This document shows positions 50,156 through 55,870 of a stretch of 64,000 bases of DNA, in pieces. This stretch comes from Zygnema circumcarinatum SAG 698-1b. Its lineage: Eukaryota > Plantae > Zygnematophyceae. The notes beneath the pieces were generated by a model. It was not told the origin of the DNA. It saw nothing but the letters and a program-made list of their open reading frames with translations, and did not search any database. Position 1 is the stretch's first letter. Every line of letters begins with the position of its first letter. The translations under genes and the position numbers were made by a program. Location of the stretch: positions 992,001-1,056,000 of the forward strand of contig CM074821.1 in NCBI GenBank assembly GCA_037447605.1, in the 5' to 3' direction.

Positions 50156-50591
50156 GTGTTTCGGTCCTTTGTGACCAGTCCTTCGTGGTTCCACATGTTG
50201 CCTTTATCCATGTAAATTTGATGGCCTCGCCATCGCGAGTTCAATGAAAGTTTGCGCTCTGAGTCGAAAAGGTTTCAGCTTCAAACTGAGAGGATTCGAA
50301 ATCGAAACGAAATCTCGCACGCTTCTATCCAACGGTTTGAATATCACACGTGCCCACGTGGCCCATCCAACGGTCATTGTTGGAGTGACTCGGTCAACTA
50401 ACGGATGCCGTTGGGTGCCGGTAGTTACGGCCGTTGCATTCAGGACGTTTTTCACATATACGGTAAATATACATATATAGAGAGTAGAGGGGAAATAGCC
50501 TTGATCTCACGATGGCAAGGCCATCAAATGTACAGGGATAAAATCAACATGGGGAACAAAAGGAATCGGTCACAAAGGACCTAAGGACAGA
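50156..50591. mobile_element. Foldback/MITE-like element with ~90-bp inverted arms
   Basis: The reverse complement of 50203-50244 (ttgaactcgcgatggcgaggccatcaaatttacatggataaa) matches 50501-50542 at 37/42. Similarity continues through ggtcacaaaggacc. Related copies lie at 18067-18176 and 46021-46039. Confidence 0.7.
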
Positions 50592-51700
50592 AAGAAAGAG
50601 CCTGTAAGTGGAAATCTACTTCTAGGCTCAACAACTTGGCACTAGAAGCAGCCACTAAGGTCGTCGATATATGGCACGTCACGCGAAGGGAGAGGTGGGA
50701 GACCACGGGGACGGGCACCAACAACTGCTGCACGCTGATGGTTGGATATGTATTATAGAGAGTAAATATGTATATACATATGACAAACCACAAACGAACA
50801 GTAGCCGATGGGGGCTCCGCCACCTGGATGATGGGCATCGATAGCCAAAACTTATGGGCAATGAGTCATAGGCATGCACATCAGGGGGGAAGCAGAGAGA
50901 GAGGAGAGGAATACGGGAGGAGGGTGAAGGACGGAGGGAAAGGATGGAGAGGAAGGAAAGAGAGGGCGAGGAGGGAAGCACATCTACCACCCCCAAGATT
51001 CCTTGTTAGATAAGAAAAACTCCCCATACCGGCTGCCGTCCGTTCAACATTGTATGCAAGATGAGAGGTGCGAACTCTTCGACGTATCCGTCCATGTACT
51101 CCGCAAAACACAAAACATAGTTATGTGGGATAGTCTTTAGGTTGGTGTAGGGAATGCGAGCCACCCTTTCCAGTCTAGAGAAATAGCCGGCAGGTGTCTG
51201 CCTTTTCCCCCAAGTCAAATCTGCAGCCATATCTACGGTCTAAACCTCCTTATGGACATCAATCTGTGCGCATGAACTTTTCTATATAAAGAATGCAAGC
51301 AGGGTTCAGCAGGGTCTAGCCGAGTTCCTGCATGCTTATGAAAGTGGGATTCATCTGTAACAACAGCTGAATTCTTGAACTTCAGAAAAGTGTAATCCTA
51401 AATGAAACCCTAAAAAAGATTGACAGTGCGAACGAGTGGTGCCAAACCCACCAGCCCCTGCGCACTGCCATCTTCTTTCAGCGGGACGGCTCCTTCCGCC
51501 GCGCAATTGTGAACCATGGAGCTAATCACACACCCATGTAGAGATAAGTCGCCCAAAACAGATAAATAGAAGATTGCTTAGGCATTCTGTGCTCATCTCT
51601 GTCTCGTACTTGCCATCGTGGCTTATGAACTTCGGCTTCCATACTGCCCATAAAACTTGAAGAATGAACTTTCTTGAACTTGAAGACTCCTCCCCCTTTA

Positions 51701-54700
51701 CTAGCAATACTTGAAGCTTACAATATGCGTGGGCAGCACATGCTCGTTCACATCATCCTCCCACACGATATACCTTGTGGGCTCCTCCATATTGTCAGTC
51801 CCTGTGTCAAATCTATCATCGCTTGGCCGCCGCTGCAGAGACTCAAAGGGCACTACCTCCATTGCTCCCACAATCAATCGGCACAAAAGCATGTGCTTCT
51901 CTCCACTGCTATCCGGCACTGCAAACTCTGCACTTGTATACGCTCTTTGCTCCGGAGCAAAGTAGATTCCTTGACCATATAATCGCCCATTTCTTCCCCC
52001 TGGAGACAGCTTGAATCCATTCAAAACAATGTTTTCAAGATTCTCGAATGGTGCTCCATGCCATGCAAGACGCTCATTTGCGTTTCCTCTAGCAGCTCGC
52101 CTGTCTGACAAAGCCCCCTCAAAAGCATCTCTCCTTCCCTCTGGGGCCCTAACTTCATACACACAGGTCACAGTCACAGGGCGGAGGGGAGATGGCGAGT
52201 TCACTATGGAGTCCACACTAGACCCTACTGAAACCCTCGTCTGTTTCTTTGTCATTCCGTTTATAAAGCGACCCACTACTTCGTTATACTGTGGAGACCC
52301 CGAACGCAGTGCTTTGAACATGGGTGGTCGAGCTGCCAAAAAGTGCGGCTTGCTTTCATCAACAGGGGGTGCTGAAGGGACGGAGTTTGAGCTGCTAGCA
52401 GAAGCAGAAGCAGAAGCTGAAGAACGGTGGGGGTCAAGTAGACTCTCCCTAGGGGAGGGGCAAGATTCAAGGCTATAGGAGCGAGGGAGAGGAGTTAAGG
52501 AAGGGAGAGGGGTTACAGAGGCAGACCTGCCCGGCATGCTATTGGATTGAGGGAGGGGGGGGGGGTAGGAGGGGGAGTTTTCCCTTGCAGACCATGAAGT
52601 GGACCGCTGGGAAACGGAAGGGGAGGGAGCTAAGCCCTGACTACGTAATTCCTGTAAGAGGGGAGCATACATAGCCAAATATCTCGGTTCTTGACTTCCT
52701 GGATGAAGCCCCTGAAAGGGCTTTGCAGGGTAGTTCCAAGCACCCAATGGAGGCACTCTCCAACATATGGATTTCGCAAACATAGAGCTCGCATTAATCT
52801 GAAAACACACAATGAAAGTACTGCATCAGTCGATGATTAGAGACCGGTCCAAGATGGAGAGTTTTGTATATAAAGCAAACAAACCCAGGAATCTATGATT
52901 GACTACAAGAGAGGAGGAGCTTGATCACTTGGTCATACGAGATGCAGACTTGTCCATGTCATGTTCATGACTTCACATCTGCATTACTACAAAGTCAACA
53001 TTCTCTGGAAACGCCATCTCCTGCCATACAGGTCTCTAATGAACCTCTCCTCATCAAGGATTCAACCGGCATTCAAGAATTGAGCATTACCTGCAGCTGC
53101 TGCCTGAAATCGACTATGTAAGTAGCCCCCGCAGAAGTGACAAGGGCGCAATATGCGGACCCCTCTCCCAGCTCAAAACTCACAGCGCGAGCTGCACTCT
53201 CATCGTATGCATTCCAAGTCCCCCCTTCAAAGTATCGAACTTCCAAGGGATTGTCGACTGCATGCTGCCAAAGCCGCTCCTGCATTGCTCTTTGACCAGC
53301 AGCATTCGCTACATGAATGGGCAGATTTCCGTACTGTTCTCCCCACATGCACCCCGGATGCACACGTGGTTTGAGTGACCAAGTTCAGACATTCCTCAGG
53401 CAAGAGAGAGGGTGATTGATGAGCATGTTTTATACATATGAAACAGGAGTGGGTCTAGGTTGTGAATGAATGAGTTTGTGACTGAGGACTTATGGAGTTT
53501 GAGGGACGGAGGTGTGGCATAGTTATCATACATGGAGGAGGGAAAAGAAAAATGAAGAAACCATTACAGTGAGGGTAATGAGGCGATGTGTAAAACATCT
53601 CGAGAAAAAAAAAAGATCAGCTAATGCTGACGTGGACAAAGACGAAACTTGAAATAGCATTCAAGACACTACTGGATTGATGAGAGATTGCTGGGAGGTA
53701 AAAGATCCCCAGCACAATACAGGCAAAGGAGGGGTATGTAATGGTTTCAAACATAGACAGAAGAACATGAACGAGATGCATATGAAATAAATTCCAGAGA
53801 TTACAAATGCAGAGTTGCTTCAGATCAGGCGTAAGAAATTTCAGCTAGCCTGAAACAACCAACGACTTGTCCGTTAGTTCCAGGATTCCTTGTGCTACCA
53901 ACTCTGCATGAGTTGGTAGCACAAGGCTTGCCTCCATAGCAGTATAGCCGCACCTTGTCCCTCACAGTGTGATCAGCTCCGCTGCGAAGTAAAGCATCCG
54001 CCACCTCCACATAGTTTGTACGAGCCACATAGTGTAGTGGAGTTTGCCCAAACTGGAGTGCAGGAAAGTGAGGAACAGTCAGCTTCAGCACATCATTGCA
54101 TTCCATCGTTAACGAATTCAGCATAAACTTTGATGTTTTGAATGTAAACGCATTGCATTGAGAAGGCCTCAGTCACAAAACAGCTCGCGGTCTTGACCTG
54201 GCAGTAGTGCTTCCGCTTCATATGGCAAATTATTCATAACCACTAAGTTGTGAATGAGATGAGACCAACGCTTGAACCTTAGCAGCGACTTGGAGCGAGG
54301 CAGCAGTGTGAGCCATCCTATATCTCGATACGCTCGTCAATCACGAAAGCCATCGGATGAAGTCGCCAGAAAGCAACTGGAGATACAACGACGAATACAC
54401 TCACATCATCTTGGGAGTTCAAGAAAGCTCCGTGCTGCAGCAGGGTCTCTACAATTTCCAGCTGCCCAGCATGGGCTGCAATATGCAACGGTCGACGATG
54501 ATGCTGCAGGAACATCAGCAAACAGGCTTATGAATTTTCAATAATAACTCTTCAAAGCCATGCGATGTGAAAAGCCAAAAAAATGAACCTAACATATGTA
54601 CCCACAGCCCAACCCACTCACTAATCTCACCCCAACCAAATGTGAAGAACGTTCACCTTCACCTTCAAAATATCTTTCTTCCAGTGTCATATTCTAAGGA

Positions 54701-55155
54701 AGATTTGTAAAAGCAGACGAGCATCATTATCAAGCAATCCGACGGCCATCTCGATACAGTGAATGTAAACACAGGACCTCAGATGTACAGTATACAAATT
54801 CATCCTTGAAGAAACCCGGTATCTGAACATGGATGCGTGTAGAAATGCAGTTGCATTTAAGCATTGTGACGCCACTACCCCACTTCATGCTGCGCAAAAA
54901 TGCACCGCATCAAGTTCCACAGACTTCGCCAACATTTAAAACCGAGGATCAAACCAGACCAAACCAAACCCCGCGCGAGCAAATATTCCTGCAAATACAT
55001 TTCCTGAAGCCCTAATCTTTAGCAGCTGCCCTCGTTACCTTGCCCAAACTCTTGGAAACCCTATTCGCATCCGTTCCGCGAAGCAGCGCCTTCCTCACGC
55101 CTTTCACGTCTCCATTCTTCGCCATGCTGTCCATCGCAGGACTGAAGAGCCCCAT
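51701..55155 (-). CDS. Ankyrin repeat-WWE-PARP catalytic domain protein; 5 exons, ~551 aa
   Basis: Minus-strand exons 55155-55039, 54503-54405 (99 nt), 54052-53954 (99 nt), 53333-53091, 52798-51701; all phase 0, GT-AG. Ankyrin motifs RPLHIAAHAGQLEIVETLLQHGA, GQTPLHYVA...GAD, GNLPIHVA. WWE-like YFEGGTWNAYD...TYIVDFRQQLQIN. PARP motifs NERLAWHG, LYGQGIYFA, MLLCRLIVG, FDTGTD...PTRYIVW...VLPTHIVSF. Confidence 0.9.
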
Positions 55156-55399
55156 AGCGATCAAACCACAGCCCTTCCTCTTCTCTCCCTTTCAAATCCC
55201 GAACCTCTGCTTTGAACCTGTTTCTCCCTACCCTCCCTCCCTCCCTCCCTCCCTCCCTCCCTCCGTCCTTCCCTCCCTCTCTCCCTCTCTCTCTACCTCC
55301 GCCCTCCCCCTCTCACCAACCCTCGCACGTGCGACATGGCCGCAGTCAGAACTTCTCAAAAAGACCATATGCCAGTCCCTCGCCCTTGGTCCGGTCAAA

Positions 55400-55870
55400 C
55401 CTCACGTGACGTGACGTGACGTGACCTGCCGTGATACTGCCGCCCTTGCGGGCCTCCCTCTCCCTTACGTCTCTCCGCATTCGGCGCAGTTTCGCCGAAC
55501 GGCCGACATTGGTGCCCTCCCAGCCGTTGGATTTGTACGTGCAGCGACCGAGACCGTCCGATTGTGAGACTCCCGCACGTGCAGGGCGCCGTCCTGCGCC
55601 GGCGGCATCGATGGCGGTGCAAGTCACCTGTCCGTATCGTACGGACTGCAAAGGGCCGGCCCTGGCCTGTACGAACCACGTGGCGGGCGGCCGCACCGAC
55701 CGGGTCCCGAATCCCACGCAATGCGGGGCTGGCGCGTGGCAAAAGTCTTGTGACAAAATTGTACGGCATTGTACAGTCGTAAGGCGGCTGGATGCCGTCG
55801 AGGGTAAAGGTCGCTGACGGCCCCGCCAATGGTTGTCTGTCATGTCAACATAATTCTCACGTGGCGAGCT
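55400..55870. promoter_or_regulatory. Upstream regulatory region of the ANK-WWE-PARP gene
   Basis: A (gtgac)4 tandem at ~55406-55425, CGTAC/GTACG cores at ~55637, 55668, 55760, 55771, and cacgtggc at ~55677 and ~55859. Confidence 0.4.

What the first reader, a model, noticed from the sequence alone, without database searches (positions are those of the whole stretch)
51701..55155. Ankyrin-WWE-PARP protein: a tankyrase-like architecture in a green plant lineage
Seen: an intact 5-exon gene joining 3-4 ankyrin repeats, a WWE domain, a Ser/Pro linker and a C-terminal PARP catalytic domain. Exons 2 and 3 are each exactly 99 nt and phase 0, i.e. one 33-aa repeat per exon. The NAD+-binding His (AWHG) and Tyr (GIYFA) are kept, but the Glu of the H-Y-E triad is Arg (PTRYIVW), and there is no RST domain. 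The N-terminus MGLFS could be myristoylated. Established: land plants have PARP1-3 and RCD1/SRO proteins (WWE-PARP-RST, with degenerate NAD+ residues). Ankyrin plus PARP is the animal tankyrase design, which land plants lack, and WWE domains bind ADP-ribose. Inference: this may be an NAD+-binding mono-ADP-ribosyltransferase or reader-writer with an ankyrin substrate-recruiting module. It could be an early relative of the SRO family or an independent convergence on tankyrase. I do not recall this exact combination described in plants.
Basis: partly seen in the sequence, partly recalled or inferred. Interest (0 to 1): 0.8.

Follow-up and report, generated by a model that had tools for sequence, protein, structure and literature searches.

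The report
Algal ankyrin-bearing relative of RCD1/SRO
This is a real, expressed gene of a streptophyte alga that encodes ankyrin repeats, a WWE domain and a PARP-like domain; it is not a tankyrase relative but the algal sister form of the land-plant stress-hub family RCD1/SRO, carrying ankyrin repeats where land plants carry an RST domain.

Summary
A 5-exon, 551-aa gene lies on the minus strand at 51701-55155. All introns are GT-AG and phase 0, and exons 2 and 3 are 99 nt each. RNA contigs from three runs show all four splice joints at the predicted bases. The protein has four ankyrin repeats, a WWE domain, a 48% Ser+Pro linker and a C-terminal PARP-like domain with H433-Y465-R528. There is no RST domain.

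The tankyrase reading fails. By sequence, fold and tree, the PARP-like and WWE domains belong to the plant SRO/RCD1 clade. The nearest solved structures are wheat SRO1 and Arabidopsis RCD1, and tankyrases are distant outgroups.

Proteins with the same architecture occur in Chara, Spirogloea, Mesotaenium and Closterium. They form a well-supported clade apart from all RST-bearing land-plant SROs.

H-Y-R is not special to this gene. It also occurs in moss, lycophyte, fern, conifer and Amborella SROs, so it is probably ancestral.

The proposed N-myristoylation is not supported.

I read the protein as a pre-RST, SRO-type ADP-ribose signalling adaptor. Whether it has catalytic activity is unresolved.

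I found no description of it in the open literature. First-reader notes of this scan mention other WWE/PARP-like genes without RST elsewhere in this genome; I did not check them.

The parts
55156..55218 (-). 5' UTR (minimum extent)
   Evidence: RNA contigs of X1 and X2 reach 55218. There is no ATG between 55218 and the start codon (read).
55039..55155 (-). Exon 1, aa 1-39: start codon and ankyrin repeat 1 (N-terminal cap)
   Evidence: Joint 54503/55039 in 3 runs. Helix pair 8-14/17-25 in the model of orthologue P0001. No Pfam hit on its own.
54405..54503 (-). Exon 2, 99 nt, aa 40-72: ankyrin repeat 2
   Evidence: Pfam Ank 36.3 bits, E 5.3e-9. Splice joints on both sides.
53954..54052 (-). Exon 3, 99 nt, aa 73-105: ankyrin repeat 3
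   Evidence: Pfam Ank 35.9 bits, E 7.3e-9. Splice joints on both sides.
53091..53333 (-). Exon 4, aa 106-186: ankyrin repeat 4 (C-terminal cap, to about aa 132) and the first part of the WWE domain
   Evidence: Pfam WWE 19.7 bits on this exon alone. Helix pair 110-116/120-132, then WWE strands from 136, in the P0001 model. The Closterium orthologue has an exon of the same 243 nt.
52622..52798 (-). Exon 5, aa 187-245: last part of the WWE domain, plus a conserved extension (strand and helix) found only in the algal clade
   Evidence: Alignments A1 and A4. pLDDT about 90 through residue 240 in the P0001 model. The two WWE tryptophans are invariant across 47 algal and land-plant sequences.
52319..52621 (-). 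Exon 5, aa 246-346: Ser/Pro-rich disordered linker
   Evidence: 48% Ser+Pro. pLDDT below 50 over the matching residues 253-337 of P0001. Poorly conserved and variable in length among orthologues.
51704..52318 (-). Exon 5, aa 347-551: PARP-like (ADP-ribosyltransferase fold) domain of the SRO/RCD1 type. His433 = 52058-52060, Tyr465 = 51962-51964, Arg528 = 51773-51775.
   Evidence: Pfam PARP 58.8 bits. PDB sequence search: 7plq 8e-24, 5ngo 3e-22. AlphaFold model pLDDT 92.5. Foldseek top hits are 7plq and 5ngo. Codons checked.
51701..51703 (-). Stop codon; the protein ends with the PARP-like domain
   Evidence: No RST is encoded downstream or anywhere in the window.
51400..51700 (-). 3' UTR (the part that was examined)
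   Evidence: Contigs at exon depth run unbroken from exon 5 to 51400. They continue about 870-900 nt beyond the laid stretch, to roughly 50505-50533. That part was not examined and could belong to a converging neighbour.

Best explanation
The gene encodes the streptophyte-algal form of the RCD1/SRO (clade 2) PARP-like family. It is a modular adaptor of ADP-ribose signalling. A rigid N-terminal unit joins four ankyrin repeats to an SRO-type WWE domain. A flexible Ser/Pro-rich linker follows, then a C-terminal PARP-like domain with the triad H-Y-R.

Shown: the gene model and its transcript; the identity of the domains; its placement as sister to the RST-bearing land-plant SROs; the conservation of the architecture in Charophyceae and Zygnematophyceae; and the presence of H-Y-R in SROs of many land-plant lineages (that it is ancestral is my inference from that spread).

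Inferred mechanism:
- The WWE domain reads poly(ADP-ribose), as shown for Arabidopsis RCD1.
- The ankyrin repeats bind client proteins, a role that the C-terminal RST domain plays for transcription factors in land plants.
- The Ser/Pro linker is a site of regulation by phosphorylation, as in RCD1.
- The PARP-like domain, which keeps the NAD+-site His, Gly and Tyr, still binds NAD+. It may mono-ADP-ribosylate itself or ankyrin-bound clients. I put NAD+ binding at about 55% and transferase activity at about 40%.

On this reading, land plants either lost the ankyrin module and gained RST, or kept only an RST-bearing paralogue.
For: Gene and transcript.

Domains.

SRO kinship:
- PDB sequence search gives wheat SRO1 at 8e-24 and RCD1 at 3e-22 against PARP15 at 4e-13. 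The alignment to RCD1 is ungapped over 147 residues.
- Foldseek ranks 7plq and 5ngo first.
- The full-length model of P0001 matches RCD1 and SRO1 best, over WWE plus PARP.
- jackhmmer runs seeded with the algal WWE and with an SRO WWE converge on the same 100 proteins.

Tree (IQ-TREE, 56 rows; ultrafast bootstrap/SH-aLRT):
- SRO superclade 99/99.
- Algal ankyrin clade 95/97.
- Algal and RST-bearing rows are separated in all 200 bootstrap trees examined.
- The order within the algal clade (Chara, Spirogloea, then Mesotaenium, Closterium and the window's group) agrees with the accepted branching of these algae, as I recall it.
- The 168-row tree agrees.

Orthologues with ankyrin repeats, WWE and PARP: Chara braunii (two), Spirogloea (P0309 carries Ank and PARP), Mesotaenium, Closterium. 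Three of the four intron positions are shared with Closterium, including the one inside the WWE domain.

Active-site conservation:
- WHGAP and the YG.G.Y.APE..A..SAE stretch are invariant in 7 algal sequences.
- H-Y-R is also found in Sphagnum, Diphasiastrum, Psilotum, Pteridium, Adiantum, Cryptomeria and Amborella SROs.
- Arabidopsis RCD1, shown not to bind NAD+, has L-H-N (PMC2848248, PMC6175486).

Published function of the family: the RCD1 WWE domain binds PAR with a Kd of about 28 nM; its WWE-PARP linker is phosphorylated by PPK kinases; AtSRO2 is reported to have mono-ART activity (all PMC10115779).
Against: - No biochemical data exist for any algal member.
- The catalytic Glu is Arg. Active mono-ARTs have a hydrophobic residue there.
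- In the HMMER alignment to PARP15, the position that I recall as matching the nicotinamide-binding Ser of PARP1 (Ser904) is Tyr here, as in RCD1. A near-invariant Ser lies two residues later, so the pocket may not be canonical.
- RCD1 and wheat SRO1 are reported inactive (PMC6175486, PMC9614482).
- The protein lacks RST, which the literature treats as defining for SROs (PMC4245714), so strict family membership fails.
- No nuclear localisation signal was seen, so the compartment is unknown.
- The tree has few and distant outgroups. The land-plant side, once Marchantia Mp5g18990 is included, is weakly supported (93/49).
Confidence: 0.6

Rival explanations
1. Pure pseudoenzyme scaffold. The PARP-like domain neither binds NAD+ nor transfers ADP-ribose, as reported for Arabidopsis RCD1 and wheat SRO1. 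It only bridges the ANK-WWE unit and its partners. The conserved His and Tyr would then serve folding or binding of some other ligand.
For: The closest solved relatives are reported inactive (PMC6175486, PMC9614482). Glu is replaced by Arg. The position I recall as the nicotinamide-binding Ser is Tyr, as in RCD1. Mutations in the RCD1 cleft do not abolish its function (PMC6175486).
Against: RCD1 lost both His and Tyr (L-H-N). The algal clade keeps the His, Gly, Tyr and the surrounding loop invariant from Chara to Zygnematophyceae, and many land-plant SROs keep H-Y-R. That pattern points to selection on the pocket itself. AtSRO2 is reported active despite a poor triad (PMC10115779).
Confidence: 0.33
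2. A tankyrase-like enzyme, either a homologue or a functional convergence. The ankyrin repeats would recruit substrates that the PARP domain poly-ADP-ribosylates.
For: Ankyrin repeats lie N-terminal to a PARP fold. ESM-feature look-alikes are tankyrase clusters. Tankyrase-2 appears at rank 4 in the whole-model Foldseek search.
Against: Four repeats rather than 15-18. No SAM domain. H-Y-R, not H-Y-E. Tankyrase PARP domains score about 15 bits in phmmer, are absent from the top 50 PDB fold matches, and are far outgroups in the tree. The ungapped alignment to RCD1 implies the short beta4-beta5 loop of SROs and mono-ARTs, not the long loop of polymerases (PMC2848248, Table 2).
Confidence: 0.03
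3. A gene-model artefact: two neighbouring genes (an ankyrin gene and a WWE-PARP gene) wrongly joined.
For: Fused models do occur nearby in this family. P0010 of Closterium joins ANK-WWE-PARP to a GRAS domain.
Against: All four joints are present in RNA contigs of three runs, at exon-level depth. Independent transcript assemblies from relatives encode the whole architecture in one reading frame (P0001, P0002). Intron positions are shared with Closterium.
Confidence: 0.02

Closest known systems
Land-plant SRO family, type A (Arabidopsis RCD1/SRO1; wheat SRO1): WWE - disordered linker - PARP-like - RST
   Same: The PARP-like domain is the closest by sequence, fold and tree. The WWE domain is of the same subtype: PF23467 (WWE_5) reaches its cut-off in the Chara orthologues P0011 and P0013, and the two jackhmmer runs converge on the same proteins. 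A disordered Ser-rich linker lies between WWE and PARP. The alignment to RCD1 is ungapped. The H-Y-R triad is shared with many non-Arabidopsis SROs.
   Different: No RST domain; the protein ends with the PARP-like domain. Four ankyrin repeats lie directly before the WWE domain, where RCD1 has nuclear localisation signals. The algal clade has its own conserved extension after the WWE domain. It is found in algae, whereas the family has been described as restricted to land plants (PMC2848248, PMC2964712, PMC4245714).
Animal WWE-PARP mono-ADP-ribosyltransferases (PARP11, PARP12, PARP14, TIPARP; clade 3)
   Same: A WWE domain followed by a PARP fold with His and Tyr kept and no catalytic Glu. The fold matches with TM-scores of about 0.70-0.79.
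   Different: Much weaker sequence similarity: E 4e-13 for PARP15 and 7e-4 for PARP12, against 1e-22 to 1e-24 for SROs. The third triad residue is hydrophobic in these enzymes and Arg here. They have no ankyrin repeats.
Tankyrases (clade 4)
   Same: Ankyrin repeats N-terminal to a PARP fold.
   Different: See the membership test. Repeat number, SAM domain, triad and phylogenetic position all differ.
Marchantia polymorpha Mp5g18990 (P0067): WWE-PARP without RST
   Same: A member of the SRO superclade that also lacks RST and keeps His and Tyr (H-Y-L).
   Different: No ankyrin repeats. No intron in the WWE domain. It groups weakly with the land-plant side (93/49), not with the algal clade.

Membership tests
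SRO / RCD1 family (clade 2 PARP-like proteins) | PARP-like domain that groups with RCD1/SRO rather than with other PARP clades | tested here: met
   PDB sequence search, Foldseek, ML trees with 99/99 support for the superclade.
SRO / RCD1 family (clade 2 PARP-like proteins) | C-terminal RST domain (PF12174) | tested here: not met
   The protein stops at the end of the PARP-like domain. An RST HMM built from 116 SROs finds nothing in six frames of the window or in the algal orthologues (best E above 0.6). No Pfam RST hit.
SRO / RCD1 family (clade 2 PARP-like proteins) | N-terminal WWE domain (type A members) | tested here: met
   Pfam WWE 25.3 and 25.4 bits in P0001 and P0002, and 19.7 bits on the window's exon 4 alone. 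The profile hits solved WWE domains. Both tryptophans are invariant with SROs.
SRO / RCD1 family (clade 2 PARP-like proteins) | Restriction to land plants, as described in the literature | tested here: not met
   Named orthologues come from Chara, Spirogloea, Mesotaenium and Closterium. The 2010 papers left this open for lack of algal data.
Tankyrase (clade 4 PARP) | 15-18 ankyrin repeats organised in clusters | tested here: not met
   Four repeats: two with Pfam hits, four helix pairs in the model.
Tankyrase (clade 4 PARP) | SAM domain between the ankyrin repeats and the PARP domain | tested here: not met
   No SAM hit. A WWE domain and a disordered linker lie there instead.
Tankyrase (clade 4 PARP) | H-Y-E triad and a PARP domain that groups with tankyrases | tested here: not met
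   H-Y-R. Tankyrase domains score about 15 bits and are outgroups on a long branch.
Active H-Y-hydrophobic mono-ADP-ribosyltransferases | NAD+ binding and ADP-ribose transfer | not testable with these tools
   His, Gly and Tyr are kept. The third position is Arg. The position of the nicotinamide-binding Ser is uncertain. This needs biochemistry.
PAR-binding WWE domains (RNF146 type) | Binding of iso-ADP-ribose or PAR | not testable with these tools
   The Y..DF...Q.N....(R/K).I pattern shared with TRIP12 and the SRO WWE domains is present, with Lys at the basic position. Mapping to RNF146 contact residues rests on my memory and was not verified.

The most novel reading that the evidence does not exclude
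The ancestral SRO, before plants moved onto land, was an active NAD+-using mono-ADP-ribosyltransferase. It used ankyrin repeats to recruit substrates and a WWE domain to read poly(ADP-ribose). Land plants swapped the ankyrin module for the transcription-factor-binding RST domain, and several lineages then let the active site decay.
Probability: 0.25. Interest if true: 0.75.

Novelty: new variant of a known kind. Interest (0 to 1): 0.55.

Why it matters
RCD1/SRO proteins are central stress and development hubs of land plants. Their origin has been an open point since 2010: both founding surveys said they could not tell whether streptophyte algae have them (PMC2848248, PMC2964712). A later survey stated that all members carry RST (PMC4245714).

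This gene and its orthologues show three things:
- The WWE-linker-PARP-like core predates land plants.
- In algae the core came with a different partner-binding module, ankyrin repeats.
- The NAD+-site His and Tyr were probably still intact in the ancestor.

That gives a concrete system for asking what the puzzling 'inactive PARP' domain of RCD1 was originally for. It also helps date the gain of RST relative to terrestrialisation.

Tried and rejected
- The profile search with the full-length alignment was swamped by unrelated ankyrin proteins. It was useful only for supplying tankyrase outgroups.
- The bacterial promoter/terminator scan of the upstream region is irrelevant to a eukaryote.
- Pfam scans of the largest neighbouring ORFs found nothing, so the genomic context is uninformative.
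- The ESM Atlas feature search returned tankyrase and ankyrin clusters by architecture only. It found no algal cluster and ran no structure search.
- Wang et al. 2012 on the RNF146 WWE domain is not held, so the iso-ADP-ribose contact residues could not be mapped from a source.
Distances in the NAD+ pocket, for example where Arg528 points, could not be measured.
- The spliced 551-aa protein has no single reference. The orthologue P0001 (70% identical) stood in for whole-protein folding and Pfam scans.
- N-myristoylation was considered and rejected.
- A hidden downstream RST exon was considered and rejected.
- The organism's name could not be established. Its placement among Zygnematophyceae rests on the tree.
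Full report
**The observation**

I rebuilt the gene from the sequence. It lies on the minus strand. Its five exons are 55155-55039, 54503-54405, 54052-53954, 53333-53091 and 52798-51701. All introns are GT-AG and all junctions are phase 0. Exons 2 and 3 are exactly 99 nt. The product is 551 aa with no internal stop.

Contigs of public runs of the same organism were laid on 51400-55400. In three runs they show joints at exactly the four predicted intron borders. Exon depth is about 120-300, against about 3-29 in most intron bins. One contig runs from exon 5 through exon 4 into exon 3. A fourth run of the same species label held nothing. So the ankyrin exons and the PARP exon belong to one spliced transcript.

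The 5' UTR reaches at least 55218. At the 3' end, contigs continue about 0.9 kb beyond 51400. I could not examine that part.

**Domains**

Pfam gives these scores:
- PARP: 58.8 bits.
- Ank: 36.3 bits on exon 2 and 35.9 bits on exon 3.
- WWE: 19.7 bits on exon 4 alone, just under the cut-off of 21.1. The domain is cut by intron 4.

The contiguous orthologues P0001 and P0002 score 25.3 and 25.4 bits for WWE. P0001 is 80% identical to the window protein in this region. A profile of the region finds the solved WWE domains of DTX1, Deltex, TRIP12, HUWE1, PARP11 and RNF146 at E 1e-7 to 7e-4.

An AlphaFold model of P0001 was built (P0001 is 70% identical overall; 47-sequence alignment). It shows:
- four ankyrin helix pairs (residues 8-132) running straight into the WWE sheet (136-217);
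- a conserved extra strand and helix (to about residue 240);
- a disordered stretch (253-337);
- the PARP fold (344-554).

In the window protein the linker is 48% Ser+Pro.

No RST domain exists in the protein, in any frame of the 64-kb window, or in the algal orthologues.

The suggested N-myristoylation is not supported. The residue at the position where the PROSITE pattern (recalled from memory) needs a small residue is Pro. Gly2 is absent from several orthologues.

**What it is**

The PARP-like domain is of the SRO/RCD1 type.
- A sequence search of the PDB gives wheat SRO1 (7plq) at 8e-24 and Arabidopsis RCD1 (5ngo) at 3e-22. The best animal enzyme, PARP15, is at 4e-13.
- The alignment to RCD1 is ungapped over 147 residues.
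- The AlphaFold model of the window's own domain (pLDDT 92.5) has 7plq and 5ngo as its top Foldseek matches, followed by PARP10, 15, 14 and 12. No tankyrase is in the first 50.
- The whole-protein model matches RCD1 and SRO1 best, over WWE plus PARP.
- jackhmmer runs seeded with the algal WWE and with a land-plant SRO WWE converge on the same 100 proteins.

An exhaustive HMMER search of 1.84 billion cluster representatives returned first a small set of close relatives and then land-plant SROs. The close relatives that carry names are from:
- Chara braunii (two genes);
- Spirogloea muscicola (two);
- Mesotaenium endlicherianum;
- Closterium (two species);
- a 'Leptophrys vorax' transcriptome whose sequence sits with Closterium and may be prey contamination.

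Wherever the sequence is full length, the architecture is ANK-WWE-PARP.

**Tree**

I built maximum-likelihood trees of the PARP domain: 168 rows with a quick search and 56 rows with a careful search. Supports are ultrafast bootstrap/SH-aLRT.
- SRO superclade: 99/99.
- Clade of all ankyrin-bearing algal proteins: 95/97.
- All RST-bearing proteins fall on the other side of that branch in all 200 bootstrap trees examined.

Within the algal clade, Chara branches first, then Spirogloea, then Mesotaenium, Closterium and the window's group. This agrees with the accepted branching of these algae, as I recall it, and is what orthology predicts.

Tankyrase domains were obtained by accident. They score only about 15 bits against the query. 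They root the tree on a very long branch.

The Closterium gene shares three of the four intron positions, including the one inside the WWE domain. Marchantia Mp5g18990, a WWE-PARP protein without RST, does not share it.

**The triad**

His433, Tyr465 and Arg528 align with the H-Y-E positions. This holds in the alignment to RCD1 (L333, H365, N428 in PMC6175486) and in the alignment to PARP15.

Arg at the third position is not peculiar to this gene. H-Y-R is the commonest state among the 168 relatives. It occurs in SROs of Sphagnum, Diphasiastrum, Psilotum, Pteridium, Adiantum, Cryptomeria and Amborella (both RCD1 and SRO2). So H-Y-R is most simply the ancestral state of the whole clade. The L-H-N of Arabidopsis RCD1 is a later decay. 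Jaspers et al. had already noted that moss SROs keep 'more conserved' triads (PMC2848248).

**How it probably works**

The steps above are shown. What follows is inference from the family.
- The RCD1 WWE domain binds poly(ADP-ribose) with nanomolar affinity, and this sets RCD1's sub-nuclear location (PMC10115779).
- The RCD1 linker between WWE and the PARP-like domain is a phosphorylation target (PMC10115779).
- The RCD1 RST domain binds disordered regions of transcription factors (PMC6908617).

The algal protein has the same WWE-linker-PARP-like core. Its WWE keeps the motif positions shared with TRIP12 and the SRO WWE domains. It has ankyrin repeats, a general protein-binding module, and no RST.

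I therefore read it as an adaptor. It couples recognition of ADP-ribose polymers to ankyrin-bound clients.

The His, Gly, Tyr and the surrounding loop are strictly conserved from Chara to Zygnematophyceae. They are retained in many land-plant SROs. This suggests that the pocket still binds a ligand, most likely NAD+, and may support mono-ADP-ribosylation.

Against this:
- the catalytic Glu is Arg;
- the position I recall as matching the nicotinamide-binding Ser of PARP1 is Tyr, as in RCD1;
- the two solved SRO domains are reported inactive (PMC6175486, PMC9614482).

AtSRO2 is reported active despite a poor triad (cited in PMC10115779), so the triad alone does not decide the matter. I put NAD+ binding at about 55% and transferase activity at about 40%.

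**Comparison with the known**

Tankyrase membership fails on every defining feature tested: repeat number, SAM domain, triad and phylogenetic position.

Strict SRO membership fails on RST, which the literature treats as defining (PMC4245714: 'all members ... contain ... RST').

The protein is best described as the RST-less, ankyrin-bearing sister form of the SRO family.

**Novelty**

Both 2010 surveys said that SROs were known only from land plants. Both added that streptophyte algae could not be examined.

Full-text searches combined RCD1, SRO, the WWE domain or the SRO gene family with streptophyte algae, charophytes or the relevant genera. They found nothing beyond those two statements. Subscription journals are not covered.

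The orthologues sit in public databases as hypothetical proteins, or under automatic names such as 'Poly [ADP-ribose] polymerase'.

First-reader notes of this scan mention other WWE/PARP-like genes without RST elsewhere in the same genome. I could not check them.

**Verdict**

The gene is real, expressed and conserved. It is a new architectural variant of a known family. It is of moderate to good interest for the origin of the RCD1/SRO hub. It is not a tankyrase.

Noticed in passing
window 55403-55426 (about 250 nt upstream of the start codon, about 185 nt upstream of the furthest RNA contig end): A run of overlapping ACGT-core elements, CACGTGACGTGACGTGACGTGACC. It is a G-box followed by repeated ACGTG units. 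It could be a cluster of bZIP-type binding sites in the promoter. A (CCCT)n tract lies at about 55228-55275.
   Followed up: no
window 52553-52565 (inside exon 5, linker region): A homopolymer of about a dozen G on the + strand (C on the coding strand) lies inside the coding sequence and encodes a Pro run. X1 and X5 contigs break near it; one X1 contig ends there in a run of loose G. An X2 contig crosses it without any difference, so the reading frame is supported.
   Followed up: partly
window about 50505-51400: RNA contigs at exon-level depth continue about 0.9 kb beyond the stretch that was laid. This implies either a 3' UTR of about 1.2 kb or overlap with a converging neighbour's transcript. 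ORFs there have no Pfam hit.
   Followed up: partly
P0007 / P0288 (EukProt, labelled Leptophrys vorax): A WWE-PARP sequence in the transcriptome of an amoeba groups tightly with Closterium (100/100). From memory, this amoeba feeds on algae such as Closterium, so prey contamination seems the likely cause rather than an amoebal gene.
   Followed up: partly
P0010 (Closterium sp. Naga37s-1, 1486 aa): The deposited model joins ANK-WWE-PARP to a full GRAS domain. This is probably two neighbouring genes fused by annotation. If real, it would tie this family to a plant transcription-factor domain.
   Followed up: no
L001 (Marchantia polymorpha Mp5g18990, P0067): A land-plant WWE-PARP protein (H-Y-L) with no RST and no ankyrin repeats. 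It sits near the base of the land-plant side of the SRO clade with weak support. It may be a second RST-less lineage that survived in liverworts.
   Followed up: partly
P0062, P0135, P0130, P0286, P0287 (Logan / ENA / JGI, organisms unknown): A small, long-branched group of short WWE-PARP proteins with H-Y-R. It lies inside the SRO superclade but outside both the algal ankyrin clade and the RST clade. Its source organisms were not identified.
   Followed up: partly
same genome, other pieces (first-reader notes s1-339086, s1-339070, s1-337074): Other WWE/PARP-like genes without RST are noted in this genome: a WWE-WWE-PARP-like protein, a cluster with HSPA12-type Hsp70s, and an SRO-like protein with H-Y-I. 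If they are real, the family has diversified in this alga.
   Followed up: no
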